Assembly: GCA_002269645.1 (NCBI GenBank)
Contig: NIVC01002251.1
Location: 1 to 41,836, forward strand
DNA: 41,836 nt
Source: Macrostomum lignano
Taxonomy: Eukaryota
Reading direction: 5' to 3'
A model generated the notes under the pieces. It was not told the origin of the DNA. It saw only the letters and a list, made by a program, of their open reading frames with translations, and ran no database searches. The position numbers and the translations under genes were made by a program. Shown here one piece after another: positions 6,905-36,046 of this stretch; position 1 is the stretch's first letter, and every line of letters starts with the position of its first letter.

Positions 6905-7556
6905 TGGCAGTGGCCCAGCAACTGAGGATCTGGAAGGCTGAGAATCTGGAAGGCTGGCCCAGCAACTGACACTCTGGGAGGCTGGCCCAGCAACTGAGTA
7001 TCTGGGAGGCTGGCGCAGCAACTGACACTGTGGGGGACTGGCCCAGCAACTGAGGATCTGGGAGGCTGGCCCAGCAACTGAGTATCTGGGAGGCTGGCGC
7101 AGCAACTGACACTGTGGGAGGCTGGCCCAGCAACTGAGGAGCTGGGAGGCTGGCCCAGCAACTGAGGATCTGGGAGGCTGGCCCAGCAACTGAGTATCTG
7201 GGAGGCTGGCGCAGCAACTGACACTGTGGGAGGCTGGCCCAGCAACTGAGGAGCTGGGAGGCTGGCCCAGCAACTGAGGAGCTGGGAGGCTGGCCCAGCA
7301 ACTGAGGAGCTGGGAGGCTGGCCCAGCAACTGAGGAGCTGGGAGGCTGGCCCAGCAACTGAGGAGCTGGGAGGCTTGCCCAGCAACTGAGGAGCTGGGAG
7401 GCTGGCCCAGCAACTGAGGAGCTGGGAGGCTGGCCAAGCAACTGAGGAGCTGGGAGGCTGGCCCAGCAACTGAAGAGCTGGGAGGCTGGCCCAGCAACTG
7501 AGGAGCTGGGAGGCTGGCCCAGCAACTGAGGAGCTGGGAGGCTGGCCCAGCAACTG
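6905..7556. repeat. 28-nt minisatellite (~23 copies) in ATP1B intron 1
   Basis: CAGCAACTGAGGAGCTGGGAGGCTGGCC. Confidence 0.95.
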
Positions 7557-7590
7557 TGTACCCCCTTAGTATGAGCAGCAGGAGATTTAC

Positions 7591-7849
7591 CAGTGCGGTG
7601 AGGCTGGTTGTCCACCAGCACGCCGTACATGAAGACGGACAGCATGCCCACAAAGAAGCCGGCCAAGCAGCTGTAGAAGATGGCGTAGAAGATGAGGATC
7701 TTCAGCCAGGACATGCCGCTGCGGCCCATGACCTTGCCTGTCTGCTTGTTGTACAAAAAGTGGAGGAAAGCGGCGCACCGAGACACCTTGGAGGGCTCCT
7801 CGAACTCGGGCTCGGGCACGAAGGCCTCGTGCTGGTTGTCCTCCGCCAT
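7591..7849 (-). CDS. ATP1B: Na,K-ATPase beta subunit, coding exon 1 (cytoplasmic N-terminus and TM helix)
   Basis: MAEDNQ...FLYNKQTGKVMGRSGMSWLKILIFYAIFYSCLAGFF is the family N-terminal/TM signature; donor G|GTAAAT at 7590, phase 1. Confidence 0.95.
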
Positions 7850-8022: not shown

Positions 8023-8640
8023 GCTACTGGGGGCCACAACTCCCCCATGCAATGCTACTGGGGGCCACAACCCCCATGCAATGCTACTGGGGGCCACAAC
8101 CCCCCTCCATGCAATGCTACTGGGGGCCACAACTCCCCCATGCAATGCTACTGGGGGCCACAACCCCCCATGCAATGCTACTGGGGGCCACAACCCCCCA
8201 TGCAATGCTACTGGGGGCCACAACCCCCCATGCAATGCTACTGGGGGCCACAACCCCCCATGCAATGCTACTGGGGGCCACAACCCCCCCATGCAATGCT
8301 ACTCGGGGCCACAACCCCCCTCCATGCAATGCTACTGGGGGCCACAACCCCCATGCAATGCTACTGGGGGCCACAACCCCCCATGCAATGCTACTGGGGG
8401 CCACAACCCCCCCATGCAATGCTACTGGGGGCCACAACCCCCCTCCATGCAATGCTACTGGGGGCCACAACCCCCCTCCATGCAATGCTACTGGGGGCCA
8501 CAACCCCCATGCAATGCTACTGGGGGCCACAACCCCCCATGCAATGCTACTGGGGGCCACAACTCCCCATGCAATGCTATTGGGGGCCACAACTCCCCCC
8601 ATGCAATGCTACTGGGGGCCACAACTCCCCTATGCAACGC
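8023..8640. repeat. 30-32-nt minisatellite (~20 copies) upstream of ATP1B
   Basis: TGCAATGCTACTGGGGGCCACAACCCCC(C)nA. Confidence 0.95.
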
Positions 8641-10022
8641 TAGCTTGATAGCTAAGTGTTAAGCTACTATACAAGTGTGAAATTTTTGTTTGACAAATAG
8701 TAAAATGATAACTTTAAGTCTATAATAAGCTGGACTCCAAGCCCGGCTACACTTACTTTAAATCTGTTAACGGCGATTCCGACTGACTGAAGCAGAGAAA
8801 GACAGGCAAACAGGCAGGCTTAGCAGAAAACAGGAGATAACGGTGGGAGAACCGGCAGAGCAGGGCTGGCAGGGACTAAAAAGCCTTGCGCTAGAGGTGG
8901 GAGAACTGGATAGGGGACGGAATTTTCCCGGCGGACAGCAGAGGGGAAAATATGGGGACTTCATAAAGCTCCGAGGATCTTTCCCTGACCCAGCCAATCA
9001 AATCAATCCACAAGGCTCACGCGAGAGAAGCGTGGAAGGGAGAGAAAGAATAGAGAGAGAATTGCATGTACAGTCAGCTTGCGCACAGGGTCAGGAGGCA
9101 AAGACAGACTGGAGGACTGGCTTTTTACCCAGCCAGTTCTAGGCTTCACAATCTCCCGAATTCATTTGGCCCTTTCATCCCCCCACAGCTGTGATGCATA
9201 TTTTGCACTTTGGATGAGATGGAAAAGGGCCGGTCCATGGAGCTCTGGATTCTGATATCTGGATTGGAAGCAGTCTTGTAAACTTCAAATTGTAGGTTTA
9301 GAAATCGGGAATGAATATTGTAGATTATTGCATGGCTGTAGAATGAGATAACTGAGTTTGGATGCCCCCATACAATGAGGATGAGCTTGACAAAAGCTTC
9401 TACTTCTTTTGAAAAAAGCAGGCTCAATATTTTTCAAGTCAGACCGGTGCCACCTGCAGGTTTAAGGAATTTTATTTAATGAAAACTTTGTCAAAAACGG
9501 CCAGAGGAAGAATCCAGCTCATGGCTGCGAAACAGGAGGCAGGAAAGGAGAGGGAATAGAAGGGTAGAGGAGATAAGAGAAGAAAGGGGAAGAGGGGAGA
9601 GAGGGGAGAAGAGAGAAGAAAGAGGGGAGAGCGGAGAGGAGAGGAAAGAGCTGAGAAGACACAAACCCTAAACCCAAAGGCGTGGGTCAGATAGAGGCTT
9701 TGCGAGCGGGTCAGATAGAGGCTTTGCGAGCCGGAGCTTGCTGACCCCTATGACTTAGAATGACAGGGGCAACAAAGACAAGCAGATGAGGTAAATGTGG
9801 TACTCGTAGGTGCAAACGCAGACTGCCGAAAAATCGACGAACATTTTTAAGCGCTAAATTGCGGAGGATTGCTGGGGAGTTTCGGCGTATTTTTGGGGCA
9901 GGCAGAACTGCAATTCTTCTTTGACTGGCAGGCACGCAGCTTTGCCAGATGTGAGAGACGGCCCAGCCTGTAGACCTACACTCACACTAGTCTAAAAAGT
10001 ACAAATGGCCGCACATCTAAAG

Positions 10023-12173: not shown

Positions 12174-12420
12174 ATTATAATAATTTCTTATATTTTGGTG
12201 TTAACCTTCATTTCTCTATTATTTATTAAAAGAGCATCGCTACCAGATAATAAATACCCAAGTAGTACTAAATAGATAATGAGGCATTTTGCCTTAATAA
12301 GATAGTCATACTTTATTCTTGCCATTTACCCAAAGTTGCACTAATTTTGCTTTAGTGTTTATCATAAAGTTGCACGTCTGAGAAAAAGTAGAATTAAGAA
12401 GGTGAGCGCTATCATTTTTT

Positions 12421-12460
12421 ATGCAACATGTTTTGCCTTGCGTCAGGCATCGTCAGGCTC
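12421..12460 (-). ncRNA. Penelope 3'-end hammerhead, G12->A inactivated
   Basis: GAGC-CUGACGA-U-GCCU...AGGC-AAAAC-AU-GUU. Confidence 0.65.
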
Positions 12461-12661
12461 TTAAAATTAGTACCAATTTATTTGTTCATATACATTTAAT
12501 AATCAAGACTAAGAATGGGTTGATAAAAGTCAGAAATGTATATAAATTAACAGTGGATTGTATAGTCCGATGGAGTGCTCACAAAGTTGCAATGAGGGGA
12601 GAGAGGGGAGAGAGGGGAGAGAGAGAGAGAGAGAGAGAGTGAGATGAGCACAAGTGTACAC

Positions 12662-13608
12662 CTAGAATACTCTAAGGAGGGCACTGGCACCGTGATTGGC
12701 AAGTTGCTTATTAAGGATTGGTTTACGCAATTTTATATACAGGGCTTCAAGCACTTTTAGTCTGTACTCATTTGAGCACGTATGGATAGTGGAGAAGTTT
12801 TTATCGATTTGGCTGTCACAGCATTCTTTGAATATCATCAGGTGGTCGTGCACAGCCGACATCTTTTGCCTGTGTTCTCTACTTCTCACGTACAGGTGTC
12901 GGGTAGTTTCACCTATGTAGGTGATATCTGGTCGCCAGAGCATTGAAATTGGTAAACGACACCTGCCCGTAAAGAGCTGGGAATGCAGCATTTCAAATTC
13001 TTAACAAATTGACCGATGTTTTCGCAACGGAAAGTGACCATGAGCTTTACATTTAAATACTTATTAAACACTTTGATGAGATTCTTTTTAAAATGAACAG
13101 AAGCAGGCCCATAGAAAGGAATGGAGATATGGGTGCAATCAGTCCTCAGATCTTTCTGTTCTTCCTTATTCTGTCTATTGTTAGGATTCGCGACTTTACC
13201 ATCAATGAATTTCCTAATGTGGTAATTGAGGAACCATTTTGGGTAGTTGTTATTGGAAAAATAGGTGCTAATCGAGCAAATTTCTTCGTGGAAACTAGTC
13301 CAGGTGCTACAGATTTCGAAAGCCCAGTGGAGCATACCACGCAGCAGGCCCACTTTCCACTGGGTTGGGCAGAGTGCAGAGAACATTGAAGTTTAGCAGA
13401 AGACCAGTGTAGGTGGGTTTACAATAAACTTTGGTAGACACACAATCATTTTCAACATTAATCTGAATGTCTAGAAAAGGTATAGATTACCCACCTTCTT
13501 CAGCAGTGAATTTTATATTGGGATAAGTGCTATTCAAGATGTCTAAGAATCGGCTATAGTCAGTCCCTTCATTGAAAACAAAAAGAGTGTCATCAACATA
13601 TCTCTTAT
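12662..13608 (-). pseudogene. Penelope RT C-terminus, thumb and GIY-YIG endonuclease (inverted copy, frameshifted)
   Basis: VVYQFQC...TYIGETTRHLYVRSREH...VLEALYIKLRKPILNKQ. Confidence 0.92.
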
Positions 13609-13649
13609 CTCCAAAAGACATAACATATCTTCATAAAAACATATCTCCA

Positions 13650-14320
13650 AAAGTTTGTGGACAGCCGCACCTATAAAGCCTTGTATCCTTGTGGGAGTCA
13701 ACCTAGGCAGTTGTATGGAACTTGTAAGGTCCACAAACCAGAGAAGCCCCTTAGACCAATTGTTTCTATGCTCAATACCACTGAATATGAAATCGCTAAA
13801 TACCTGGACAAGCTTATCAAGCCATATATACCGCAAGATCATCAAGTTAATTCTAATAGACAGCTGCTGCAATCTTTAGGAATTACCAAACTTAATCAAA
13901 ATGAAGTGCTCTACAGTTTTGACGTTGTCTCTTTATTTACTAACATTCTGCTAGAGTTTGCTATTAACCTTGCCACGGATACTGTTTTCCAATATTCGAA
14001 ACCAGATTTGGACAAAGAAACTTTCCACAAACTCCTCATCTTTGCCACTAACGGAATCTTCATGTTTCAGAATAAGCTTTACCAGCAGATTGATGGCTGT
14101 GCCATGGGGAGCCCTTTAGCCCCTACCCTGGCCAATCTTTGTCTGGCTCATTGGGAAGAGGAATGGATGAAGAGTGATGCGGCCCCTAAATTCTATAAGA
14201 GATATGTTGATGACACTCTTTTGGTTTTTAATGAAGGGACTGACTATAGCCAATTCTTAGACATCTTGAACAGCACTCATCCCAACATAAAATTCATTGC
14301 TGAAGGAGGTGGGAAATATC
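13650..14320 (+). pseudogene. Penelope-type reverse transcriptase fragment
   Basis: KVHK...PLRPIVS, SFDVVSLFTNI, YQQIDGCAMGSPLAPTLANL, YKRYVDD, HPNIKF. Confidence 0.95.
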
Positions 14321-14325
14321 CCATA

Positions 14326-14624
14326 CATACATGTGCAACAGTCGGCCGAGTCGGCCAATCTGGCTGACTGATTTTGTGACCAACCAAGGAAGTCCCAAAA
14401 TGCCCACCCGAAAAAATACCAAAGTAGTAGTACTAAGTAGCTGACAAAGAATTTTTGAGTTAATAAGACAGTCATAGTTACTCCTACCGTTTACCCAAAT
14501 TTGCATTAATTTTGCTTTAGGGTTTTTTTTACATGTAAGTCGCATTTTTGGCCAAAAACGATGTCACATTTTTGTTAAAACTAAGTTGCACGGCTGACCG
14601 AATTTTGGAGGTTGCACATGTATG
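14326..14624. mobile_element. 299-bp MITE with 8-bp TSD (hAT- or P-like)
   Basis: Perfect 14-bp TIR CATACATGTGCAAC/GTTGCACATGTATG; TSD ATCCCATA at 14318-14325 and 14625-14632. Confidence 0.92.
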
Positions 14625-14632
14625 ATCCCATA

Positions 14633-15099
14633 TCTTTATTCCTTTCTATGGGCCTGCTTCTGTTCATTTTAAAAAGAACCTCATCAGAGCATTTAATAAG
14701 TATTTAAATGTGAAGCTCATGGTCACTTTCCATTGCGAAAAAATTGGTCAATTTGTTAAGAATTTGAAATGCTACATTCCCAGCTCTTTACAGGCAGGTG
14801 TCGTTTACCAATTTCAATGCTCTGGCGACCAGAGTATCACCTACATAGGTGAAACTACCTGACACCTGTACGTGAGAAGTAGAGAACATAGGCAAAAGAT
14901 GTCGGCTGTGCATGACCACCTGATGATATGCAAAGAATGCTGTGACAGCTAAATCGATAAAAACTTCTCCACTATCCATACTTGCTCAAATGAGTATAGA
15001 CTAAAAGTGCTTGAAGCTCTGTATATAAAATTGCGTAAACCAATCCTTAATAAGCAACTTGCCAATCACGGTGCCAGTGCCCTCCTTAGAGTATTCTAG
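14633..15099 (+). pseudogene. Penelope GIY-YIG region, direct copy
   Basis: Near-identical reverse complement of 12662-13130. Confidence 0.9.
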
Positions 15100-15298
15100 G
15101 TGTACACTTGTGCTCATCTCACTCACTCTCTCTCTCTCTCTCCCCTCTCTCCCCTCTCTCCCCTCATTGCAACTTTGTGAGCACTCCATCGGACTGTACA
15201 ATCCACTGTTAATTTATATACATTTCTGACTTTTATCAACCCATTCTTAGTCTTGATTATTAAATGTATATGAACAAATAAATTGGTACTAATTTTAA

Positions 15299-15338
15299 GA
15301 GCCTGACGATGCCTGACGCGAGGCAAAACATGTTGCAT
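15299..15338 (+). ncRNA. Penelope 3'-end hammerhead, G12->A inactivated (second arm)
   Basis: GAGC-CUGACGA-U-GCCU gacgcg AGGC-AAAAC-AU-GUU. Confidence 0.65.
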
Positions 15339-15505
15339 AAAAAATGATAGCGCTCACCCTCTTAATTCTACTTTAGGGTTTTTTTATGTTCAAGTTGCAT
15401 TTTTGGCCAAAAACTACATTGCATTTTTTGTTAAAAACAAATATAGCCAACCAAATTTTGGAGGTTGTGCATATATGTGCCACACAAAATAGGTCTAGGC
15501 AAAGG

Positions 15506-20616: not shown

Positions 20617-21028
20617 AAATATAGATGAAGAGAGATAGTAAATTTTTAAAGTCTAGTAAGCCAAAATGAATCAATGATGCAAGTATGAGCTATAGGTAGC
20701 AGAGTTAGATGGCCCTGAATAAAAGGCAAGTGCATGGGGTCAGAAAAAAATAAATGTGCATGGCATATTATATACTAGTTAGTCAACAATGGCAGCCATC
20801 TTTGACCTGGCCTTCAAGGTGCTGCCATATCCACCTTATTCACTTGACATTGTTTCCATTGACTTCTGGCTATTTAGTAAGATAAAAGAAACCCCTTTGA
20901 AGCTGCTAATATAGTTCTATAAAGGCTCTAAAATCAGCTATCAACTGGTAGGTTAGAGGCCAAAAGAAGGTCACCTACAGAAACTGCCTAAGAGATTACA
21001 GAAGTATATAACCCTTAATGGTGCTTAC

Positions 21029-22323
21029 CGTAAAGACGGTCTCTGACTGTTTTTACCCTGGTTGCCTCTCTGGTAGCTTGTCTAAGGGTTGTGCGCAATC
21101 CGATTGGCTATGCCAATTTCTAAGGGTCCGCCCCGGAGGGGCTATGCCCGTTCTAAAAATAAACCCTATTTTTTCTCTATATCCAATTTCGGCCCTCGGC
21201 CCTGGTTTAGGGGGGGTGGTGCCCGGAGTGAGTTGTTTCTCTGGACTGCAGTGTGGCTAGGTCGGGACTTGAGCCCCCCGGTCGTACCTGCCCTGCAGGA
21301 AAGCATGACCAATTCACAAAGGTGTATGGTAGACCCAGTAGACTGCCAGCCCTGAGGCTGAGCACCCAGGTTGCAGGTCGGCAAGCTGCCTGCTTTAGGG
21401 CTATGGTGCTCCTCCTTCTGCCATTCTTTTTTTCTGGGCTGGCATCCTAGTGCTGTTTTATCCCTTAGCTTTGTGCCTTTGTGGCTTTTATTATTTTAAT
21501 CTTTTATCTTGGCCACTAGAAGCCTTCCAATCTTCGGAGTTTTGAGCTCTGCCCTCGCCCGGTCCATCTTGCCCTGTCCTTGGGTCCATCTCCTGGCTCC
21601 TGCTGCAAGGTCCCTGCTTGCGTGTCTCTGGCTCTCATCCTGACAGTGGATTGGTGTCCTGGGAAGGATGTTCGTCCCGAACTGGGGACAACCGGCTGAG
21701 TTCGGAGTCCTCTTGCCCTGGGTGCCTCTTCTCCTGACCCCTTGGCCTGGCCCCAAATATTGAGCTAGATAGGCGATGCCCTTGGGTTGGTAGCAATATA
21801 GGTGGACGGTCTTCCCGCCTAGAGTCTCCCCCTTGGATACAAGCCTTCCAGACTCACTCCAAAATAGAGCTGGGTAGTGAAAAGCCTTGAGGCTCGAGAC
21901 CCGCTTGGTGTCTGGTGTGGATCGCTTCTGGTAATTAGCTGCCCAGACTCGTTCCAATAGTTTAAGCCATTTCCGCAGGTTTAGGAATAATTCCTTCCTC
22001 GGACTGCTTTCAGTAGTAATCCAAGCATTTCGCTTTCAAATTTTCTGCGCACTCCCAAAGACTTGCTGGCTGGGGGGTGGCCTGGGTGGACTTGGTCCTA
22101 GCACTGTCCCTGATTCCACTGTTGTTTTGGCAGTGTCTTGTACCGTAGGCTTGGGTCTAACTCGCCTCCCCGTGCCTTGAGCCGGGTCCAATCCCAATGT
22201 ATCTCTAGGGGTATCTCGGGCCCTGTGCAGCTAATGCCCTGGCCCCTGGTAGTGCCCCTCGCGGCAGAGCCCTCCCCCGGGCTGATCCGCGGGTAGCTAA
22301 GCTTCCCACCCCCGTTTAACAAC
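21029..22323 (+). mobile_element. 1.3-kb non-coding retro-insertion with SL-like head (candidate SINE)
   Basis: Perfect 12-bp TSD AATGGTGCTTAC (21017-21028, 22324-22335); no TIRs; ends in AACAAC. Confidence 0.85.
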
Positions 22324-22905
22324 AATGGTGCTTACATGTATATTGAAAATGAGGAGCAAATTATATTTCATATATATTATTATCTTATATTCTTTTGTTA
22401 ATAATTAAAATTATTGAAGCTTATTATATAAAAACATAGCTACCATAACATAATTTTGTTTGACATAATAGTTAAGGCTGTTAGGCCTTTACTTTATTGT
22501 AGGCACAATATTGACATGATCACTATATCTCTAAGTATTTTGAAGTTTCTAGGTCCCTTAGAACTGGAAATAAAATGATCTATAATATTAATATAATAAG
22601 CCTAGACCTAATACATATTGTTATATAATAATAAACCTATCATTGAAAATTTTCTTTTTCTTCTTACATTTATCATTTCTTATAATTTTCTGCTAATATT
22701 ACAATGAAGCAAACAAACATCAACTCTTTTTTTAAACTGGTAAGTGCTACCTATGATGGAAATTTATAACATTTTACCTATCAAATCCACATGTTCTAAA
22801 TGTATAAGAACCCTACTCTTATGTACACTCATAGATATACATTTGTCTATTTTTATGGTTTATTTTTTACTTTAGATGGAAGGAAATTGCGAGCATTTTT
22901 CATTC

Positions 22906-22999: not shown

Positions 23000-23529
23000 G
23001 GCTCCACCGCGGCCCAGTCTGCGGCCTCCACTGTTGACATTGTGCCGCCGTCTCCCCCTGCGGCGCCCCAGCAGCAGCAGCAGCAGCAACAGCCACAGAA
23101 GCGACTCGCCCGCCGCTCTTTCCTGTCCAACCCGCGCCCGTCTTCCGCCTCATCCTCCGCCTCGTCCGTCGCCTCCGCCGTCTCCTTTGACAAGCCGCCC
23201 AACGCCAAGGCCTCCAACGTGGCCCGGACAATTTTCGGCCGGAAGCGGCCACCAAAGGGTCTCAACTATCGGCCGGACGCGCCTGACCTGCCGCCGGCCA
23301 AGCGGGCTTTCCTGTACGGCGAGGAGCAGCAGAAGCAGCAACAGCAGAAGCTGACAGCCGAGCCCATTGTGGTGCTGTCGGACAGCAGCAACAGCAGCGG
23401 CGCCTGTTCTCCCAGCGAGAAGTCGCCCGACTGTGCGGTGGGGCGGGCAGCGAAAATTGGCAAGGAGAATTCGGATGCTGGCGCTGCTGCCGAGCTTGAG
23501 GCTGAGGCCGATTGCTGGCTGCCTGCGGA
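23000..23529 (+). CDS. DNA2: DNA2 first identifiable coding exon (low-complexity N-terminal extension; no in-frame ATG)
   Basis: CTCTCACAG| acceptor at 22999; open frame GSTAAQ...CWLPA; donor GA|GTGAGA (phase 2) splices in frame to the next exon. Confidence 0.75.
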
Positions 23530-23754
23530 GTGAGATCCCAATCTGGCCTGTTTGGGATTCCGCATAAGCTCGTTGGGATTGAGGATTTAACAGACCTTGG
23601 AAACCCATCGCATTGAAAACCTGTCTGAGTATTGACCTTCAGACAATATTTTGATCTCCTTAAAATCCTATCTCGTCTTGAGATCTCAGATGATCTCATA
23701 CGGGTCCTATATGATCTTCTTGGCCTCCCGTATGATATCCTTGGCGTCCCGGAT

Positions 23755-24000
23755 GATCTCATTAGGATCCCATATAATCTCGAGATCCCATATAATCTTG
23801 GATCCCATATAATCTTGAGATCCCATATAATCTTGAGATCCCATATGATATTGAGATCCCATATGATATAATCTTGGATCCCATATAATCTTGAGATCCC
23901 ATATGATCTTGAGATCCCATGTAATCTTGAGATTCTATATAATTTTAAGATCCCATATAATCTTGGGATCCCATATAATCTTAAGATCCCATATAATCTA
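23755..24000. repeat. 18-nt minisatellite, DNA2 intron 1
   Basis: GATCCCATATAATCTTGA. Confidence 0.9.
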
Positions 24001-24149
24001 TCTCAATTTGTGATTATTATCTCAAGATCTTATCTCACATTGAAATTCAAGTATAATCTCCTTGAGATCTCTCTATGATCTAGTTGGATCCCATCCCGCC
24101 TCCTTAGGATCCGACCTCCCTAACTCTGAGACCCCAACCCCTCCTGCAG

Positions 24150-24612: not shown

Positions 24613-25003
24613 CTGGGATCTGAGGACTCGAAACTGGGGATCTGAGGGCTGGGGACTTGGCGTCTGAGGGCTGGGGACTTGGGATCTGAGGGTTGGGACT
24701 GGATACTGAGGGCTGCGGACTTGGGATCTGAGGGTTGGGGACTTGGGATCTGAGGACTCGAAACTGGGGATCTGAGGGCTGGGGATTTGGGATCTGAGGA
24801 CTCGAAACTGGGGATCTGAGGGCTGGGGATTTGGGATCTGAGGACTCGAAACTGGGGATCTGAGGGCTGGGGATTTGGGATCTGAGGACTCGAAACTGGG
24901 GATCTGAGGGCTGGGGATTTGGGATCTGAGGACTCGAAACTGGGGATCTGAGGACTCGAAACTGGGGATCTGAGGGCTGGTGACTTGGGATCTTAGGACT
25001 GGA
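24613..25003. repeat. 44-nt compound minisatellite, DNA2 intron 3
   Basis: GGGGATCTGAGGGCT + GGGGATTTGGGATCTGAGGACTCGAAACT. Confidence 0.9.
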
Positions 25004-25113
25004 GACTGAGACCTGGACAATTTATCTAGAATTGAGATAAAATAAAGATCTGCAGACAATGCCGTAGGGAAATATGCCCGAATCCACTGTCATGTGCCGC
25101 CACGCTGTTACAG

Positions 25114-25201: not shown

Positions 25202-25378
25202 GTAAGTCAGACTGGCCCAGCCTCATACTTTGCATTTCATTTGAATATAAATGTTTGATTTCACTAAGTCCGAACTAAACATGGAAATCTTTTTGGTTTC
25301 TAACTGGCTCATAACTCACAGAATCACCACCGGGTATTTTAGGTTCGGTAATTAATCATTCGCATAATAAGTTTGATC

Positions 25379-26219
25379 GTATGGGATCCTAATGAGATCA
25401 TATGGGATCCTAAGGAGATCATATGGGATCCTGATGAGATCATATGGGATCCTAATGAGATCAAATGGGATTCTAATGAGATCAAATGGGATTCTAATGA
25501 GATCAAATGGGATCCTAATGAGATCATATGGGATCCTAATGAGATCATATGGGATCCTAAGGAGATCATATGGGATTCTAATGAGATCATATGGGATCCT
25601 AATGAGATCATATGGGATCCTAAGGAGATCAATGGGATCCTAAGGAGATCATATGGGATCCTAAGGAGATCATATGGGATCCTAAGGAGATCATATGGGA
25701 TCCTAAGGAGATCATATGGGATCCTAATGAGACCATATGGGATCCCCAGTAGACCATATGGAATCCCCAGTAGACCATATGGGATCCCCAGTAGACCATA
25801 TGGGATCCCCAGTAGACCATATGGGATCCCCAGTAGACCATATTGGATCCCCAGTAGACCATATGGGATCCCCAGTAGACCATATTGGATCCCCAGTAGA
25901 CCATATGGGATCCCCAGTAGACCATATTGGATCCGCAGTGGATCATATGGGATCCGCAGTGGATCATATGGGATCCGCAGTGGATCATATGGGATCCGCA
26001 GTGGATCATATGGGATCCGCAGTGGATCATATGGGATCCGCAGTGGATCATATGGGATCCGCAGTGGATCATATGGGATCCGCAGTGGATCATATGGGAT
26101 CCGCAGTGGATCATATGGGATCCGCAGTGGATCATATGGGATCCGCAGTGGATCATATGGGATCCGCAGTGGATCATATGGGATCCGCAGTGGATCATAT
26201 GGGATCCGCAGTGGATGAT
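25379..26219. repeat. 21-nt minisatellite in three variant blocks, DNA2 intron 4
   Basis: ATGGGATCCTAATGAGATCAT / ATGGGATCCCCAGTAGACCAT / ATGGGATCCGCAGTGGATCAT. Confidence 0.95.
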
Positions 26220-26405
26220 ATGCACGGATTCAATCCAGAGGTCGTATCGTGAAGAGTCAGACGCGGTTACTCTAATGGATAAAGTAGGGAATATTTATCT
26301 GAATTCCCGAAGCATTGCGGGCAAAATGCACTAGGGGAAGAACCTCTTGGACACGAATATCTCGATAGTCCCCCAAGTTGAACTGTTTGCTCGGCTCGCC
26401 CGCAG

Positions 26406-26783
26406 CTGCTGGTTCGCCATCAGACGGCTCCCGTGACGGAGGCGTCAGCCTCGGCGGCAGCGGCGCAGCTGGTGAATTCCGGGCAGCTGGCGCAGCAGCT
26501 GGCGGCGCTGGGACTGTCCGAGTCCGAGCTGCTGGCCGAGGTGTCCCAGTTTGTCAAGCACATCGTCGACTGGCTTCGCCGCCATCACGACGACGATGGC
26601 AGCGACGGTCTGCGGGTGAACGGCGTGGCGGACATCGAGGAGAGCGTCGGCAGCCGAAGATTCGGCCTGAAGGGCAAGGTGGACGTCAGCCTGCTGGTGG
26701 CTGACGCTGCGGGCGGCGACAAGCGGCTGCCAGTTGAACTTAAAACTGGCCGGGCGAGCTTCAGCCACGAGCACGTTGGACAG
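26406..26783 (+). CDS. DNA2: DNA2 exon 5 (nuclease active site)
   Basis: DIEES...RFGLKGKVDV...VELKTG...EHVGQ, PD-(D/E)XK (RecB/Cas4-like) nuclease motifs. Confidence 0.96.
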
Positions 26784-26802
26784 GTAAGCAGCACGCGGGC
26801 TG

Positions 26803-27722
26803 GCGAGATTTGTTGGAATCGGTAGGTAGATTTGTTGGAATCGGTAGGTAGATTTGTTGGAATCGGTAGCTAGATTTGTTGGAATCGGTAGCTAGATTTG
26901 TTAGAATCGGTAGCTAGATTTGTTGGAATCGGTAGCTAGATTTGTTGGAATCGGTAGCTAGATTTGTTAGAATCGGTAGCTAGATTTGTTGGAATCGGTA
27001 GGTAGATTTGTTGGAATCGGTAGCTAGATTTGTTAGAATCGGTAGCTAGATTTGTTAGAATCGGTAAGTAGATTTGTTAGAATCGGTAGCTAGATTTGTT
27101 AGAATCGGTAGCTAGATTTGTTGGAATCGGTAGCTAGATTTGTTAGAATCGGTAGCTAGATTTGTTGGAATCGGTAGGTAGATTTGTTAGAATCGGTAGC
27201 TAGATTTGTTAGAATCGGTAAGTAGATTTGTTAGAATCGGTAGCTAGATTTTTTGGAATTGGTAGGTAGATTTGTTAGAATCGGTAGGTAGATTTGTTAG
27301 AATCGGTAGCTAGATTTGTTAGAATAGGTAAGTAGATTTGTTAGAATCGGTAGCTAGATTTTTTGGAATCGGTAGGTAGATTTTTTGGAATCGGTAGGTA
27401 GATTTGTTAGAATCGGTAGCTAGATTTGTTAGAATCGGTAGCTAGATTTGTTAGAATCGGTAGCTAAATTTGTTAGAATCGGTAGGTAGATTTGTTAGAA
27501 TCGGTAGGTAGATTTGTTAGAATCGGTAGCTAGATTTGTTAGAATCGGTAGGTAGATTTGTTAGAATCGGTAGGTAGATTTGTTAGAATAGGTAGGTAGA
27601 TTTGTTAGAATCGGTAGCTAGATTTGTTAGAATCGGTAGGTAGATTTGTTAGAATCGGTAGCTAGATTTGTTAGAATCGGTAGCTAGATCTGTTAGAATC
27701 GGTAGCTAGATTTGTTAGAAAC
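26803..27722. repeat. 22-nt minisatellite (~41 copies), DNA2 intron 5
   Basis: AGATTTGTTAGAATCGGTAGCT variants. Confidence 0.95.
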
Positions 27723-27788
27723 GTCTGGTGGATAGCAACAATTTCACACGCAGAGCTCAAGCCTCAACATTGTGCTCAACCATGCCAG

Positions 27789-28128: not shown

Positions 28129-28650
28129 GTGATCCCTTGATCCCAGATCCTTTCACCCCAGATCCCTTGACCCCAGATCCCTTGACCCCAGATCCTTTCA
28201 CCCCAGATCCCTTGACCCCAGATCCCTTGATCCCAGATCCCTTGACCCCTGAGAATTGATTCCTGATCCCTGATCCCACATCCCAGATTATTCACCCACG
28301 ATCACTTGATCCCAGATCATTGATCCTTGATCCCTGATCCCTTGATCCCTGATCCCTGATAATTGATTCCCGATCCCTGATCCCACATCCCAGATATTTG
28401 ACCCATGATCACTTGATCCCTTGATCCCTGATCCCTTGATCCCTTGATCCCTGATCCCTTGATCCCTGATCCCTTGATCCCTGATCCCTTGATCCCTGAT
28501 CCCTTGATCCCTGATCCCTGATAATTGATTCCCGATCCCTGATCCCACATCCCAGATATTTGACCCATGATCACTTGATCCCAGATCGTTGATCCCTACT
28601 CCCTGATCCCTTGATTACTTGATCCCTGATCCCTTGATCCCTGATCCCCT
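28129..28650. repeat. GATCCCT(T) 7-8-nt repeat with larger internal duplications, DNA2 intron 6
   Basis: Starts at the donor GT itself. Confidence 0.9.
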
Positions 28651-28702
28651 AATCCAAGCTGTCAGATTTTAACGCTCAGCGCGACCCCCCACCCCTTGCC
28701 AG

Positions 28703-30542: not shown

Positions 30543-30707
30543 GTAAGTTATAAAAAGCATTTACTTACTTGCTTAGCTGCAGGGCTGTCCCGGGGGGACA
30601 CAGCGGGAAGGCGCGAACGCCCATTCCGCTAATCCCTGAACGGCCGACGCGTCGCTATGGACGAAGGGTTGGCGCCGCCCAGGGAGGTCCCCCAGTGTCG
30701 CCAGCAG

Positions 30708-31717
30708 CTATGGTGCTCTCTGGAAAGGAGAGTTCAGCCCTGCGGGTGGCCCGGAGGTAGCGCATGAGCTGATTAAAGTTTCGGGTTTGCACGCTTCAGT
30801 AATAGATGTGTGTGGCCCGAGGTAAGTGAGTCTGGCTCGCATAAAGGCGGGACAGATGCTGACGAAATACTCAGCGGTTCCGTCACCTGAGTTACAGAAA
30901 CTGCAGATGGCGTTGGTGGCGTTGCCCTGCAGGTACTGGTGCCTAGAGAAGCAGCCGTGACCTGAGAGGGTCATGGTGGCAGCCCGGATGTCTCTGCGCG
31001 AGAGGCGCAAGAGGAGCTTCCGGAGCTGGTGAGAGGGCTGAGGGACAGCGCCTCTGGATTGCCTGCAGGTGGTGCAGTTCGCCCAAGTCGAGCGGTGCTG
31101 GGTCCTGATCCACGCTTTGATGCGCGAGTCGGGAGCCAGGAATCGGGACAAGGGGTTCGGGACCGAGAGAGGAGCCGGAGGCGCCAACTTTAGCAAGGGC
31201 GTCAGCCAACTCATTTCCTCGGATCCCCACATGCCCCGGAACCCACTTAAAGGTGAATTTATTGGTGGAGCCCAACATGTTGAGGAGTTTGATACAGTCG
31301 AGGACTGTAGCAGAATTGGTACTACAGCCACTGATGGCGTGCAAGGCAGCTTGGCTGTCCCAATGGAAAATGTTCTTACCGGTTACGCCAGTGGCGAGGA
31401 GCTCTGCGGTGCAGGAGCTGATGGCGAGAACTTCATTTTGGAAGACACTGGAGTTGACCCCCGTGTACTGAGCGTGGGTTGCGATGACCCTCCCGTTCAA
31501 GAAGATTCCAACACCAAAACCGGTGTTGGCTGACTGCTTAGAACCATCGGTGTAGCAGTGAAGCTCACCAGGGTTCCAGTGGTCATTGATGGTATCGCGC
31601 GAGTCGATTAGCGTTGTCTCAGGTTGAGCGTTGAGGCAATGCCATCGGTAAAAGACGCGATTGGCCTGACACTCGTTGAGAATGTTGAGGCACAGGTCGC
31701 TATGCGGGTGAGGCGGC
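30708..31717 (-). pseudogene. LINE ORF2: RNase H and C-terminal Zn-knuckle region
   Basis: CYTDGSK, VFQNEVLAI, WDSQAAL, WVPGHVGIRGNELADALAK; CSFCNSGDGTAEYFVSICP. Confidence 0.92.
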
Positions 31718-33300
31718 TTAGTTCAATCTTCCGACTATCGCATGCAGGGCGCTGTCAGTCGCCCTCCCAGTACGGAAGACGTGCTGGTGATTGCTGAGGG
31801 GTATTGCTGTCAGCTCGCATCGCATGAAAGCAGCCGCCAGAGAATAAGCCTCTCAGTCAGCTTTAGCATTGCTGACGTTAAGCTAATTGGCCTAAAGGCC
31901 TTGACGCTCTGGTAGTCACCCTTCCCAGGTTTGGGAATGAAGACTACCCGAGCTTCGGTCCAGCACTTGGCAACGTATCCCAGCTGGATAGAGGCCCGCA
32001 TGAGATTGCGGGTAAGTCTCAAGAACGAGGGTATCTTGGCTGCTTCACGAAGAAGAACAGAGTAGATACCATCAGGTCCAGGAGATTTGAAGGGCTTGAA
32101 GGTTCTGACCGCACGAGCGATTAAGTCTTCAGTGATAATGCCCGCCGCTAGGGTGGTTCCATCCATCGAATGGTTGGGTTCCAATCTAGCAGTGGGTACC
32201 GTCGGAAAGAATGTGCTGAGCATATACTGAAGCACTTCTTCAGGGTCTTTAGTAAGAGAGCCATCATCTTTTCTGATCATGGCTAATTTTGACATTTTGT
32301 CCATTGTAAGGGCCTTGACAAGCCTAGAAGTAGGTCTGTCTTGATCCAATTCATTGCAGAATTAGCGCCATTTACATTCCTTGGCCTTGCGCACTTCAGA
32401 TTTGAAGTTGCGGGAGGCTTGTCGGAAAAGCTCCATGTCCTCTGGGTTTCCGGTCTTCATGGCACGGCGATGAAGGCTTTTGGCCTTCCGCCTGAGTTTC
32501 CCCAGCTCCGGGTTCCACCACGGTGCCGAGGTCTTGCCTTTGTAGGCACGGACAGGGCAGGCCGCTTCAAAGGCTGCAATAATGCAACCTGTCAGCGTCT
32601 CAGCCGCATGATCCACATCCTCGCAGGTCTCAATCGGACAGGAAGGGCTCCTCAGACCAGACTCTCCACTCCTCAACTCTGTCAAAGAGTCTTGGGGTAA
32701 CGAGTGTGGCATCGAGGACCTCAGTCCATCTGCCATTGTTAAAGATAGGAGTTCTACCGCGGTTGCAGAGCATGAGGTTTGTGTTAGAGATAAGGGCCAG
32801 AAGCTCCTCCCCTCTAGTATTGGTGTCTTTGCTGCCCCAGTGCTTATGGTGTGCGTTGAGGTCGCCCCCTAAGCACAGCTCAGCGTTCTGGGACTCGCAG
32901 TACTGCGCAAGGCGCAGTAGACTCCCAGGTGCAGGGTCTCTGTCGCCTGGAATATAAATCGAAGCAGCAAGACACGTCCGCGGAGAGATATGATTAGATT
33001 GGATGACACAGTGGTCTCCATCTGAGAGATCAGTCCTCAGCCAAGTCTGGAGATGGCTGGCAGCGAGGATAGCCGCTCTGGGGCGGCTGTTCCCCGGGCC
33101 ACACACATAAAAGTCAGAGTAGTCAGAAGGAATGTTGGGCAACTTACCGGTGCGCATCCAGGGTTCCTGGATCAGGATGAGGCCTGGCCTGTACAGCTCA
33201 GCAATCTTCATCAGATTTACTGACGCAGATACGCAATGCTGTAAATTTATTTGCAGACAGAATGTCGCTCCTTTGGCAGCGTGGAGCTTAGTCGTACTGT
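31718..33300 (-). pseudogene. LINE ORF2: APE endonuclease and N-terminal RT, frameshifted and truncated
   Basis: ORFs 32630-33211, 32362-32736 and 31810-32349 in different frames; ends at HQHVFRTGRATDSALHAIVGRLN*. Confidence 0.9.
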
Positions 33301-33422
33301 ATTAAATGCAATAGCTGGCTAGAACCCCGGGCCATCAAGGAGACTTGGAAAGCAAATCGTCCTCGTCCCAGGCCGTTGGGGCTTGACTGGGAGATGGGAG
33401 TTGGTCGACGTCTATGGCCTCC

Positions 33423-34829
33423 TCACCCCCACCAGCCCCCCCCCCCAGCAGAGTCCTCGGGCTCCGATGACAGGATGGAGGAAGCTTCCTCATCTGTATC
33501 TTTGCCTTCAGACCCCACCAGGGTGGCCGAGGAGAGCTCGGATTCCGAAGACCCAGCCTCGTCCTCAACTCCTTCTCCTGCTAGCAGGTTCGCTTCCCGG
33601 GGCTTGGCCGGAGCCGTCACCGCGGTCGCCGAATTGCTGCTAGCAGAGGGGCCAGACGCAGCTCCGGCTTTGGGATCGGCTTGCGCCTTTCCTTGTGCCT
33701 TAGACTGCGCCCCGCTCTTGCCGGAGATGCCGGGGTTGGCAGAAGCCTTCCCCTTGGCAGACTTTCCTCGGCGCATCTTGAGCTTGAGGGCACCCAGCTG
33801 GAAAGAGGATCCGTTAGGGTACCGACTCGCCCAAGCGTTGGAAAGGCCGATGACGATTGATTTGCCCGTCTCCCCCCTGCAGACATTGCGGTGATACACC
33901 AGTCCACTAGCAGGGAGGTCGGGATTCAGGCGCAGTAGGACCCGGCGGATAACGTCTGGTCCAGCTGCGGTGCTCTTTGCAGGGACAAAAACCACGTAGG
34001 TTATTGTCTTTGGACGCTGGCCTTCGCGAAGAAAAAGGGCTCCGCCGAGGTCAGCATCCAAGGAGACCGTCGGCAGCCGCTGAAGCAGCTGCTGAGCGTC
34101 CTCCTCACTGCTAGGAGCAATAAGAACGAATGTGCTTCGCAGCACCATCCATTCAATGCCGATGGAGATTCCCTCCTCGACAGTCAGCTCAATCAGATAG
34201 GAGTCAATAGCACTCCACACTTTTTGAAGCTGATCAGTGGTCCAGTCCTGGTCGCGACCTTGAATGATCACTCCCGGGATTTTGGCCTTGGCCTTCGCCG
34301 CAAAGGTAGCTCCCGAAGGAACCTCCTTGTTGGCAGTGGCCATTTGTTGCGCCGTGGTTTCGGCCTCAGCAGCCGCAGCAGCATCTCCAGGGAGCGCCGC
34401 CGCTGAACTACCGGAGCTTCCACCGGCCGGCCCGTCTGGTTGCCTTGGGACGCCAGTTGCTTCAGCGTCCATGGTGGACGCCGCCGCTTTGGCCCCCGCA
34501 GCTCCCTACTTGGCCTGCCTTTTGGCGCGTTGCTTAGCGCGTTTGCGCTCAAGCCGAGCCCGCTGAGCTTCGTCGGATCTGCCAGATTTGGCCGGTCCTT
34601 TAGGCTCAGAGCTCGCGGTTCCCTTTGATCCTCCAGCAGAGCTGGCAGGTCTTTGGGTACTTTGAGTTTGGTAGCTCTGGTCGGATCTGCCAGCAGAGCC
34701 AGCCGGCCCTCCCTTTGCCACAGTTGAATCAGTCGGTTAGGATCTGCCAGCAGGGCCGGCTGGTCCGTCGGACTGAGGTTGGGGTTTAGAAGGGTCCCCG
34801 TCCCTAGAAATAGCTTGTTTATTATCCAT
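33423..34829 (-). pseudogene. LINE ORF1 (gag-like), interrupted by two in-frame stops
   Basis: ATG at 34829 is in frame with the 349-aa ORF 34472-33423; stops near 34739 and 34506. Confidence 0.75.
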
Positions 34830-35435
34830 AGTCGGCTCGAAGGCCATGATAAAAGTTGGTGGGCTACCCTCGAAGGGGCGCGGTACCCACCCGGTCGCTC
34901 CACCTGACCGGGCAGTAGGCCAAAAGAACCCTCAAGGCTGGCCCGACACCAAGAGGGGGACCGCTTGCGACCGGACTACTCCCCGGCCTTCCAGCCCATC
35001 GGCACGGTCGAACACCTTAGGCATTAGAGGGTACGTTGAGCAGTACCACGGTCTGCGGACTGGCGAACCAAACCCGCATACCCAAGTTCGGCAAAAGCCA
35101 CTGGATGGGTCCCCAGCGCCGGAGCCCAGTCAGTCCGGCAGCCCTAGGGTCTGCCTTGAACACTCGCGGGGACGGGTACCCCTGGGTCGGCTTGCAAAAC
35201 AGCGTGGGGGGGGGTCTGCGGCTGCCAGCGGCAAATAGAGGGTGCAGACCTCCCACCAGCCTTTACCTACTGAAGATAGGGGCAGGCGTGGAGCATCGCA
35301 GACCTTAGCCCATAGGCCTGGTCTGTCTCATACTTCACTGGCATGCTGAATACGCCCGAGCGAGCATAAAAAAGATTTAAATGTTATTACTTTGATTTGT
35401 AGTAACTATTTTCATCGTGCATTTTTAACTGCCAG

Positions 35436-35636: not shown

Positions 35637-36046
35637 TTCCTGACACCCACCGCCGCTCCTAACACCCACCCCCTCTCCTGACACCCACCGCTGCTCCTGA
35701 CATCCACTGACACTCCTGACACCCACCGCTGCTCCTGACATCCACTGAAACTCCTGACATCCACTGACACTCCTGACATCCACTGACACTCCTGACATCC
35801 ACTGAAACTCCTGACATCCACTGACACTCCTGACATCCACTGACACTCCTGACATCCACTGACACTCCTGACACCCACCTAAGCTACTGACATTCACTGA
35901 CACCCAGCAACAAAACACCTGACACTCCTGACACCCACCTAAGCTACTGACATCCACTGACACCCAGCAACAAAACACCTGACACTCCTGACACCCACCT
36001 AAGCTACTGACATCCACTGACACCCAGCAACAAAACACCTGACACT
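35637..36046. repeat. 19-nt and ~59-nt compound repeat, DNA2 intron 12
   Basis: CTGACATCCACTGACACTC. Confidence 0.9.

What the first reader, a model, noticed from the sequence alone, without database searches (positions are those of the whole stretch)
21017..22335. Candidate spliced-leader-headed SINE: 1.3-kb retro-insertion starting with a flatworm SL-like sequence
Seen: a perfect 12-bp TSD, no TIRs, an AACAAC end and no recognisable protein; removing it restores the mariner frame, so the boundaries are exact. The first 22 nt (21028-21049) are CCGTAAAGACGGTCTCTGACTG, with a CCGT-AAAG-ACGG hairpin. Recalled from literature and to be verified: the Macrostomum SL begins CCGTAAAGACGGTCTCTTACTG (21 of 22 identical), and flatworm SLs share this 5' hairpin. 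A donor-like CTG|GTAGC lies 45 nt from the start, about where an SL exon would end. It is followed by hairpins (GGGTTG/CAATCC, ATTGGC/GCCAAT), a U-rich Sm-site-like AATTTCTAAG, a GCCCC/GGGGC hairpin and a T6 run. Inference: a non-autonomous retroelement whose head derives from an SL RNA (or SL-like snRNA) gene, rather than from tRNA, 7SL or 5S. Such a head could supply a promoter, cap or translation features, or interfere with trans-splicing.
Basis: partly seen in the sequence, partly recalled or inferred. Interest (0 to 1): 0.88.

Follow-up and report, generated by a model that had tools for sequence, protein, structure and literature searches.

The report
Retro-insertion capped by a spliced-leader fragment
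A 1.3-kb non-coding, retrotransposed insertion really does begin with the first 22 bases of the flatworm spliced-leader RNA, but the match stops abruptly there, so it looks like a leader fragment fused onto an unrelated RNA, not a SINE built from a whole leader-RNA gene.

Summary
A perfect 12-bp direct repeat (21017-21028 and 22324-22335) brackets a 1,295-bp GC-rich insert in an AT-rich mariner relic. The insert has no terminal inverted repeats, no coding signal and no poly(A) tail. Its first 22 nt match the published Macrostomum spliced leader (SL) at 21 of 22 positions and start within 1-2 nt of the SL RNA 5' end.

After nt 22, identity to the SL falls to chance (6/22). I fetched two genuine Macrostomum-type SL RNA genes. 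Pairwise alignment to them, a covariance model built from them, and a 32-sequence flatworm SL RNA profile all fail to recognise the rest of the proposed head. The leader-terminal AUG, the GURAG donor and the UUUGG/AUUUUUAG Sm motif are absent.

The first ~128 nt are strongly structured on the + strand only (z about -3.1). They include a 12-bp 5' hairpin that the one SL mismatch helps to close.

Best reading: a LINE-mobilised non-coding retroposon or retrocopy whose 5' end gained a 3'-truncated SL RNA fragment. The likely route is reverse-transcriptase template switching, as in U6/U1/U2 chimeras and SINEU heads. A master copy sitting inside an SL gene is the alternative.

Interest is moderate.

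The parts
21017..21028 (.). Left copy of the 12-bp target-site duplication AATGGTGCTTAC. The last C may belong to the element instead.
   Evidence: Perfect direct repeat that cannot be extended on either side.
21028..21049 (+). SL-derived 5' terminus CCGTAAAGACGGTCTCTGACTG. It corresponds to SL nt 2-23 counted from the G that starts the published 45-nt leader (the transcription start itself has not been mapped). The one mismatch is T>G at the 18th base.
   Evidence: 21/22 identity to the published SL and to the SL genes L001 and L002. It is the only such site in the window.
21030..21056 (+). 12-bp 5' hairpin GTAAAGACGGTC-TCT-GACTGTTTTTAC with two G-U pairs. It spans the breakpoint between SL and non-SL sequence.
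   Evidence: Minimum-free-energy and centroid folds agree. The 3' arm is the reverse complement of the 5' arm apart from two C>T changes. The G that mismatches the SL pairs with C14.
21050..21155 (+). Structured, non-SL part of the head. It has four further hairpins (21060-21078, 21086-21101, 21102-21118, 21124-21149), the ATTGG/CCAAT palindrome and a CCGCCCC box.
   Evidence: The 21028-21155 window folds with z -3.1 on the + strand and -0.66 on the - strand, and no other 128-nt window in the element passes |z| 2. It shows no similarity to SL RNA or to any Rfam family.
21150..21190 (+). AT-rich linker with an A-run (AAAAATAAA, 21155-21163) and T6 (21169-21174) between the head and the GC-rich body.
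   Evidence: Sequence and fine-scale composition.
21191..22313 (+). GC-rich, T-over-A-skewed non-coding body of unknown origin.
   Evidence: No homologues in any frame. No codon periodicity. No similarity to the rest of the window.
22314..22323 (+). 3' end GTTTAACAAC. There is no poly(A) tail and no AATAAA signal near the end.
   Evidence: Sequence. No significant similarity to the 3' end of the one LINE in the window.
22324..22335 (.). Right copy of the target-site duplication AATGGTGCTTAC.
20789..21016 (+). Decayed mariner transposase C-terminus (the target of the insertion). It continues at 22336 onwards.
   Evidence: The restored frame aligns with the Mos1 C-terminus, E 4e-9.

Best explanation
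The insert is a young, non-coding retro-insertion made by a LINE-type endonuclease and reverse transcriptase through target-primed reverse transcription. Its RNA template carried the first ~22 nt of the host's Sm-class SL RNA at its very 5' end. That fragment was joined at a sharp breakpoint (SL nt 18-22) to an unrelated RNA made of a ~100-nt structured segment, an A/T-rich linker and a 1.1-kb GC-rich body.

The SL piece is a 3'-truncated snRNA fragment added onto the 5' end. The most likely route is that the reverse transcriptase reached the 5' end of the body RNA, switched template onto the abundant SL RNA, and ran to its cap. Complementarity between the body's first bases (GACTGTTTTTAC) and SL nt 3-14 may have helped the switch. 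This is the mechanism documented for U6/U1/U2-LINE chimeras and for the recurrent 5' addition of U1/U2 pieces to crocodilian SINEU elements.

What is shown: the boundaries, the target-site duplication, the SL homology and its sharp end, the lack of coding capacity, and the strand-specific 5' structure. What is inferred: the LINE machinery, the template switch, and whether this chimera is a single event or the founder or member of a propagating family.
For: - Retroposition signature: a perfect 12-bp target-site duplication, no terminal inverted repeats and a sharp composition boundary.
- The 5' end coincides within 1-2 nt with the SL RNA 5' end, judged from the published leader and two fetched SL genes.
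- Identity is 21/22 and then 6/22. Beyond nt 22 there is no similarity by alignment against shuffles, by covariance model or by flatworm-wide profile. This is a breakpoint, not gradual divergence.
- The + strand is the RNA sense strand. The head folds with z -3.1 on + and -0.66 on -, with G-U pairs that exist only on +.
- The hairpin spans the junction. I calculated by hand, from the element's base composition, that the 7 nt after the SL part would extend the pairing by chance with p of roughly 1e-3. The lone mismatch closes the stem.
- Precedent: SINEU heads arise by repeated 5' addition of 3'-truncated U1/U2 pieces with occasional microhomology, and they insert into a mariner (PMC4494074).
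- Partial leaders next to LINE and LTR elements are common in parasitic flatworm genomes: 597 loci (PMC12582326).
Against: - Only one copy could be examined, so a template switch cannot be told apart from other ways of making the same junction.
- No partner LINE was identified. The one LINE in the window has a different 3' end, (AAGT)n, with no significant tail similarity.
- The 3' tail (AACAAC) is short and not diagnostic.
- The strong structure of nt 23-128 would also fit a head derived from some other, unidentified small RNA.
- The host species, and therefore its exact SL, was not identified.
Confidence: 0.45

Rival explanations
1. 5' transduction from an SL gene. A master copy of the element sits inside an SL RNA gene at about nt 22/23, in the sense orientation, and is transcribed from that gene's promoter. 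This is how SLACS is transcribed in trypanosomes, and R2 is similarly co-transcribed with 28S rRNA. Every transcript then starts with SL nt 1-22, and this locus is an off-target copy of such a transcript.
For: - It explains the exact SL 5' end, the sharp breakpoint and a source of transcription for a promoter-less non-coding element.
- The two SL loci L001 and L002 are conserved only from -6 to about +110, with no shared upstream element. An SL-proximal or internal promoter is therefore conceivable.
- SL-gene-specific LINEs (SLACS, CZAR, NeSL-1) are established from my own knowledge. Kojima argues that some SINEU copies are transcribed from flanking sequence.
Against: - This copy lies in a mariner relic, not in an SL gene.
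- No SL remainder (CGAAGACTCAATTTATTGCATG) occurs anywhere in the window.
- No SL-gene-specific LINE is known to me in flatworms.
- The junction-spanning hairpin is not predicted by this model.
Confidence: 0.17
2. The whole ~125-nt head is a diverged SL RNA (or SL-like snRNA) gene, with a 45-nt exon, a donor, an Sm site and a terminal hairpin, heading a multi-copy SINE-like family.
For: - GT lies at nt 45/46, where the true donor lies at 44/45. The layout is a hairpin holding the GT, more hairpins, a U-rich stretch and then a GC hairpin.
- The head is a discrete, strand-specific structured module.
- An A-rich linker after the head recalls composite SINEs.
Against: - None of the conserved flatworm SL RNA motifs beyond the 5' hairpin is present. 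The exon ends CUCUG rather than UGYAUG. The donor is GUAGC rather than GURAG. AAUUUCUAAG is neither AUUUUUAG nor UUUGG.
- The covariance model and the profile do not score the head.
- 95% identity followed by chance-level identity is not how a diverging gene looks.
- A GT within +/-1 nt of a given position is expected about one time in five (my hand estimate).
- At 1.3 kb with no Pol III head, it is not a SINE in the strict sense.
Confidence: 0.15
3. A retrocopy of a transcript that had acquired the SL by trans-splicing. This is the explanation proposed for partial-leader loci next to transposable elements in parasitic flatworms and for SL relics in dinoflagellate genes.
For: Retrotransposon-associated partial leader sequences are frequent in flatworm genomes and were interpreted this way (PMC12582326). 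About 30% of M. lignano genes are reported as SL trans-spliced.
Against: - Trans-splicing would deliver the entire 44-45-nt leader, and its 3' end (…TTGCATG) would abut the acceptor exon. Here the 5' half is present and the 3' half is missing, which is the opposite of what 5' truncation gives.
- There is no poly(A) tail, no AATAAA signal, no ORF and no parent-gene homology.
Confidence: 0.05
4. The element is sense on the minus strand: a 5'-truncated LINE-like element with a decayed ORF and a 3'-terminal hairpin. The SL match would then be an antisense coincidence or a transduced flank.
For: The minus strand is A-rich throughout. One minus frame has only 7 stops in 432 codons, matched or beaten by 30 of 2000 shuffles. 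Its longest open run of 179 codons is matched by 99 of 2000 shuffles.
Against: - The minus frame has no codon periodicity (p 0.54), whereas real ORFs of the window's LINE give p 1e-9 and 3e-4.
- No homologues were found.
- The structure is specific to the + strand.
- An insert boundary falling exactly at the SL RNA 5' end has no explanation in this orientation.
- There is no tail at the would-be 3' end.
Confidence: 0.05

Closest known systems
SINEU (crocodilian retroposons with U1/U2 snRNA-derived heads; Kojima 2015, PMC4494074)
   Same: - A 3'-truncated piece of a Pol II-transcribed, Sm-class snRNA sits at the extreme 5' end of a non-coding, target-site-duplication-flanked retroposon.
- Heads are added by template switching, with variable truncation points and occasional microhomology.
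- There is no internal Pol III promoter, and oligo-T runs occur inside the element.
- SINEU inserts preferentially into a mariner, and this element lies in a mariner relic (n=1, so this may be coincidence).
   Different: - The donor here is the SL RNA, not U1 or U2.
- Only 22 nt are retained.
- The element is 1.3 kb, whereas SINEU elements are under 500 bp.
- Family status, a Tx1-type partner and target preference are untested.
Chimeric retrocopies made by LINE template switching (U6/U3/U5/5S-L1 chimeras in mammals; the MGL chimeras of Magnaporthe, PMC2104539)
   Same: A small nuclear RNA copy at the 5' end is fused directly to an unrelated RNA copy, and the whole is bracketed by one target-site duplication.
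   Different: - Those chimeras usually end in poly(A), and the 3' partner is a recognisable LINE, Alu or mRNA. Here the 3' partner is unidentified and tailless.
- I found no such chimera with an SL RNA donor in the literature I searched.
Partial-leader loci next to LTR/LINE elements in parasitic flatworms (Calvelo et al. 2025, PMC12582326)
   Same: The only SL RNA feature is a partial leader, and it is attached to a mobile element in a flatworm genome.
   Different: - Those 597 loci were filtered out of that study and not dissected, and they were attributed to trans-splicing of transposon transcripts.
- Here the anatomy argues against trans-splicing: the 5' half is kept, the 3' half is lost, and the start coincides with the SL 5' end.
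- The host here has a Macrostomum-type leader, which points to a free-living macrostomid.
SL-gene-resident LINEs (SLACS/CZAR in trypanosomatids, NeSL-1 in C. elegans) and the Pr77 heads of trypanosomatid LINE/SINE elements (PMC8190864)
   Same: The retroelement RNA begins with, or depends on, SL RNA gene sequence or its transcription factors.
   Different: Those elements are autonomous, or share a dedicated 77-nt promoter, and they reside in SL genes. This element is non-coding and lies in a mariner relic.
SVA and Sadhu-type non-coding retroposons
   Same: Kilobase-size, non-coding, LINE-dependent composite elements that are neither LINE nor SINE.
   Different: They have different components and hosts. 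SVA has a poly(A) tail and an identified partner (L1).

Membership tests
Flatworm SL RNA gene | Leader begins with the conserved 5' CCGU...ACGGU segment | tested here: met
   21028-21049 matches the Macrostomum leader at 21/22 positions. The flatworm profile aligns 21028-21050.
Flatworm SL RNA gene | Leader ends in (UGY)AUG, immediately followed by a GURAG donor | tested here: not met
   The head has CUCUG|GUAGC at nt 45/46. Genuine genes have UUGCAUG|GUAAG.
Flatworm SL RNA gene | Sm-like motif (AUUUUUAG in Macrostomum-type genes, UUUGG in parasitic flatworms) between a hairpin and a 3' GC hairpin | tested here: not met
   Only AAUUUCUAAG is present, and part of it lies within a predicted stem. 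The profile gives no alignment there.
Flatworm SL RNA gene | Whole-molecule match to an SL RNA covariance model or profile | tested here: not met
   Model R1, built from L001 and L002, does not list the head among hits at E<=10 with filters off. nhmmer with 32 SL RNAs covers only nt 1-23, E 8.8. Caveat: R1 is built from only two close sequences.
SINE (strict sense) | Head from tRNA, 7SL or 5S with an internal Pol III promoter, and total length under about 600 bp | tested here: not met
   No tRNA. No Rfam family at E<=10 apart from one spurious lncRNA hit. The element is 1,295 bp, and T6 lies at nt 142-147.
SINE (strict sense) | 3' tail shared with a partner LINE | tested here: inconclusive
   No significant similarity to the 3' end of the only LINE in the window (270 of 1000 shuffles score as well). 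The genome-wide LINE set was not available.
SINE / any transposable-element family | Dispersed copies with the same ends and different target-site duplications | not testable with these tools
   The element is single-copy in the window. The host genome is absent from the protein collections: the Dna2 exons find only a 42%-identical hit, and look-ups were empty. Viral-contig scans were empty.
snRNA-headed retroposon / template-switch chimera (SINEU-like) | 5'-terminal segment collinear with the 5' end of an snRNA, truncated at its 3' side, joined directly to unrelated sequence | tested here: met
   SL nt 2-23 are followed by chance-level identity.
snRNA-headed retroposon / template-switch chimera (SINEU-like) | A single target-site duplication brackets the whole chimera, with no terminal inverted repeats | tested here: met
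Processed retrocopy of a trans-spliced mRNA | Complete leader abutting the acceptor exon, a poly(A) tail, and homology to a parent gene | tested here: not met
   The 3' half of the leader is absent. There is no poly(A) tail or AATAAA near the end. There is no protein homology.

The most novel reading that the evidence does not exclude
The insertion is one member of an active, multi-copy family of kilobase-size non-coding retroposons. All copies would start with the same 22-nt SL RNA 5' segment folded into a 12-bp cap-proximal hairpin. The family would keep that segment because it supplies SL-type functions: an internal or proximal snRNA-type promoter element (the Ascaris SL sequence is reported to act this way, from my own knowledge), trimethylguanosine capping, or protection of the RNA 5' end. 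That would make the SL RNA a new class of retroposon head donor, the invertebrate counterpart of SINEU. It would also be a possible source of competition with trans-splicing.
Probability: 0.22. Interest if true: 0.75.

Novelty: new variant of a known kind. Interest (0 to 1): 0.45.

Why it matters
- If confirmed genome-wide, it would add the SL RNA to the short list of small RNAs that donate retroposon heads (tRNA, 7SL, 5S, U1/U2, 28S).
- It gives a dissected example of what the hundreds of partial-leader loci next to transposable elements in flatworm genomes can be: a template-switch or transduction product rather than a trans-spliced transposon transcript.
- It matters for SL RNA gene annotation. 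Such loci mimic SL genes in BLAST-based screens.
- As a single chimeric retrocopy it would be a minor curiosity.

Tried and rejected
- Rfam. Gathering thresholds on the whole window gave no hit. E<=10 on 20900-22450 gave only a spurious lncRNA hit. Rfam also gave no SL-family match on the two contigs carrying genuine Macrostomum-type SL genes, so this test says nothing about SL ancestry.
- Finding other copies through proteins. The 153-aa ORF, a six-frame concatenate of the whole element and the 179-codon open stretch against 1.84 billion representatives all returned nothing. Exact look-ups of two window ORFs returned nothing. A Dna2 exon query found only a 42%-identical protein, so the host genome is not in these collections and the negatives say little about copy number.
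- Collection scans. I spent the single metagenome scan and the single genome scan on the leader pattern. This yielded two genuine SL RNA genes, which were useful as references, but left no scan for the element-specific junction. Viral-contig scans for the junction and the leader were empty.
- Partner LINE. The 3' end of the window's LINE versus the element's 3' end was not significant. tblastx and blastn of the element against the window found nothing beyond itself.
- Minus-strand coding hypothesis. Rejected on codon periodicity, despite the low stop count.
- tRNA-like head. None found.
- Mariner terminal inverted repeats and Pfam on the mariner relic. Nothing found.
- RNAalifold on the 32-sequence SL RNA alignment gave no consensus structure, so I used a sequence profile instead.
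- An ATTATTGCATGG match at 9324-9335 to the leader's 3' end is only 11-12 nt and at chance level.
Full report
**1. What is in the sequence**

The 12-mer AATGGTGCTTAC occurs at 21017-21028 and again at 22324-22335. The repeat is perfect and cannot be extended by a single base on either side (also family D4).

The 1,295 bp between the copies are 54.6% GC. The 200-bp flanks are 38% and 23% GC. T exceeds A along the whole length of the insert. There are no terminal inverted repeats.

The insert ends in GTTTAACAAC, with no poly(A) tail and no AATAAA near the end.

Removing the insert joins ...KLPKRLQKYITLNGAY to MYIENE... in one frame. The target is therefore a decayed mariner. The insertion lies only about two codons before the transposase stop, so 'frame restoration' is a weak test of the boundaries. 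The duplication and the composition step carry the argument.

One base at each end is ambiguous: the C at 21028 and the AA at 22324-22325.

**2. The spliced-leader match is real**

The recalled leader was checked against the literature.
- M. cliftonense: GCCGTAAAGACGGTCTCTTACTGCGAAGACTCAATTTATTGCATG.
- M. hystrix: the same sequence from CGTAAAG onwards (PMC10468722, Table S3).
- M. lignano: a 35-nt SL, CGGTCTCTTACTGCGAAGACTCAATTTATTGCATG. [quoted passage not shown]

Window 21028-21049 matches the first 22 nt after the initial G at 21 of 22 positions. About 3e-7 such matches are expected by chance in the window. It is the only leader-like site in the window.

Scanning public contigs for the leader gave two genuine SL RNA genes. 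One is on a JGI metagenome contig (L001). The other is on a contig binned into a Flavobacteriaceae MAG (L002), which also carries a U1 snRNA gene and is plainly flatworm DNA.

These genes show the real anatomy. A 45-nt leader ending in UUGCAUG is followed by GUAAG. Stem I pairs the leader with the donor region. Then come the hairpin GAUCCA...UGGAUC, the motif AUUUUUAG and the hairpin AGCCC...GGGCU. In both genes the leader is preceded by ...TTTG. The insert therefore starts within 1-2 nt of the SL RNA 5' end.

**3. The match stops at nt 22**

- Across the second half of the leader, identity is 6/22, which is chance level.
- Local alignment of the head after nt 22 against either genuine SL RNA scores no better than dinucleotide shuffles: 1994 and 1101 of 2000 shuffles do at least as well.
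- BLASTN of the whole element against both SL loci finds only the 25-nt 5' match.
- A covariance model built from the two SL RNAs, run over the window with filters off, does not list the head among its ten hits at E<=10.
- I built a profile from 30 parasitic-flatworm SL RNAs (PMC12582326, Supplementary File 1) plus L001 and L002. It aligns only 21028-21050, at E 8.8.
- The motifs conserved from Macrostomum to cestodes are absent from the head. These are UGYAUG|GURAG, the AUCG/ACCG segment and the UUUGG/AUUUUUAG Sm-like site.
- The GT at nt 45/46 is real. A GT within one base of a given position is expected about one time in five (my hand estimate), and GUAGC is a poor donor.

A jump from 95% identity to chance-level identity indicates a breakpoint. 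It is not what a diverged whole gene looks like.

**4. What follows the breakpoint**

The first 128 nt fold far better than shuffles on the + strand (z -3.1 to -3.5). They do not on the - strand (z -0.66). No other 128-nt window of the element is unusual on either strand. The + strand is therefore the RNA sense strand, and the 5' region is a discrete structured module.

The first hairpin pairs nt 3-14 (GTAAAGACGGTC, from the SL) with nt 18-29 (GACTGTTTTTAC). It has twelve pairs, two of them G-U. The single difference from the SL (G at position 18) closes the stem. The seven bases after the SL match extend it. By my hand calculation from the element's base composition, this has a chance probability of roughly 1e-3 with G-U pairs allowed. 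The junction thus lies inside a hairpin.

Four more hairpins follow. They contain an ATTGG/CCAAT palindrome and a CCGCCCC box. Next comes an A/T-rich linker (AAAAATAAA...TTTTTT), and then the GC-rich body.

The body has no detectable relatives in any frame. It has no Pfam domain and no similarity to the rest of the window. One minus-strand frame has few stops: 7, matched or beaten by 30 of 2000 shuffles. That frame shows no codon periodicity (p 0.54), whereas real ORFs of the window's LINE give 1e-9 and 3e-4. I attribute the low stop count to T-poor composition, not to coding.

**5. Mechanism**

A variable-length target-site duplication, the absence of terminal inverted repeats, non-coding content and a complete 5' end point to target-primed reverse transcription by a LINE enzyme acting in trans.

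The SL fragment at the 5' end has three possible sources.

(a) Template switching, which I rank first. The reverse transcriptase reaches the 5' end of the body RNA, jumps onto the very abundant SL RNA and runs to its cap. This is the established origin of U6/U1/U2 chimeric retrocopies. It is also the origin of the repeated 5' additions of 3'-truncated U1/U2 pieces to SINEU elements, which show variable truncation points and occasional microhomology (PMC4494074; PMC2104539). The ACTG shared at SL nt 19-22, and the complementarity between the body's first bases and SL nt 3-14, fit a pairing-assisted switch. In that case the single 'mismatch' at position 18 would belong to the body RNA.

(b) A master copy inserted in an SL RNA gene at about nt 22/23 and transcribed from the SL promoter. 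SLACS is the precedent. This explains the same junction, but this copy is not in an SL gene and no leader remainder is nearby.

Section 3 contradicts it.

Acquisition by trans-splicing was suggested for 597 partial-leader loci next to LTR/LINE elements in parasitic flatworms (PMC12582326). It is contradicted here because the 3' half of the leader is the part that is missing. That half must abut the acceptor exon.

**6. What could not be done**

The decisive test is copy number and conservation of the 5' end among copies. It needs the host genome. The host is not represented in the searchable protein collections.

The element is single-copy in the 41.8-kb window. The one LINE in the window has an endonuclease domain and an RNase H domain and an (AAGT)n end. 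It does not share the element's 3' end. Whether this is a family or a one-off chimera is therefore open.

The host species was not identified. The leader match indicates Macrostomum or a close relative.

**7. Comparison and verdict**

The closest known system is SINEU together with the wider class of snRNA-LINE chimeric retrocopies. The architecture is the same: a 3'-truncated Sm-class snRNA piece at the 5' end, one target-site duplication and no Pol III head. There is even the same kind of target, a mariner, though that is a single observation here.

The differences are the donor RNA (SL RNA), the short 22-nt piece, the 1.3-kb size and the unknown copy number. It is not a SINE in the strict sense, and it does not pass the tests for an SL RNA gene.

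I rate it a new variant of a known kind, of moderate interest. It would become considerably more interesting if a genome search shows a family that conserves the SL hairpin.

Noticed in passing
L002 1121-1283 and 1589-1699 (JAGQZA010000190.1, 'Flavobacteriaceae bacterium' MAG): A contig deposited in a bacterial MAG carries a full U1 snRNA gene (151.7 bits) about 300 bp upstream of a Macrostomum-type SL RNA gene. It is flatworm DNA mis-binned into the MAG, and it shows U1-SL gene linkage.
   Followed up: partly
L001 610-725 versus L002 1584-1699: The two SL RNA loci are 91% identical from about -6 to +110 but show no conserved upstream element. Either the promoter evolves fast or it lies within or next to the transcribed region.
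   Followed up: partly
window 30560-35300, minus strand: A LINE with an ORF1-like 349-aa ORF (33423-34472), an APE endonuclease domain (32630-33211) and an RNase H domain (30943-31500), ending in (AAGT)n at about 30560. No RVT domain was detected between the endonuclease and RNase H domains, so the RT core appears deleted or decayed.
   Followed up: partly
window 12385-15374: An RT-bearing ORF (13657-14367, RVT_1) lies between 750-bp inverted repeats (12385-13133 and 14627-15374, 96% identical). This arrangement is typical of Penelope-like elements. I did not check for a GIY-YIG domain.
   Followed up: no
window 739-1276, 5781-6501, 6911-7560, 8023-8642, 23650-24112, 24614-25010, 25375-26222, 26803-27723, 28130-28655, 35638-36046, 37984-39153: The window has an unusually dense set of minisatellite arrays. 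Several lie inside or next to host exons and create long repeat-encoded ORFs. The array at 23650-24112 is related in inverted orientation to the one at 25375-26222.
   Followed up: no
window 812-1654 and 6500-7849 (minus strand); 26433-26825 and 37516-37887 (plus strand): Host genes: exons of a Na+/K+-ATPase beta subunit on the minus strand, and exons of Dna2 nuclease/helicase on the plus strand. The insertion lies between the two genes, about 0.7 kb upstream of a Q/S-rich ORF at 23042-23533 (no Pfam match) that may be the first Dna2 exon. It has the same orientation as Dna2.
   Followed up: partly
window 21102-21165: The head contains an ATTGG...CCAAT palindrome, a CCGCCCC (GC-box-like) motif and a TAAAAATAAA stretch in the order seen in Pol II promoters. 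This may be chance, or it may be an internal promoter of the element.
   Followed up: no
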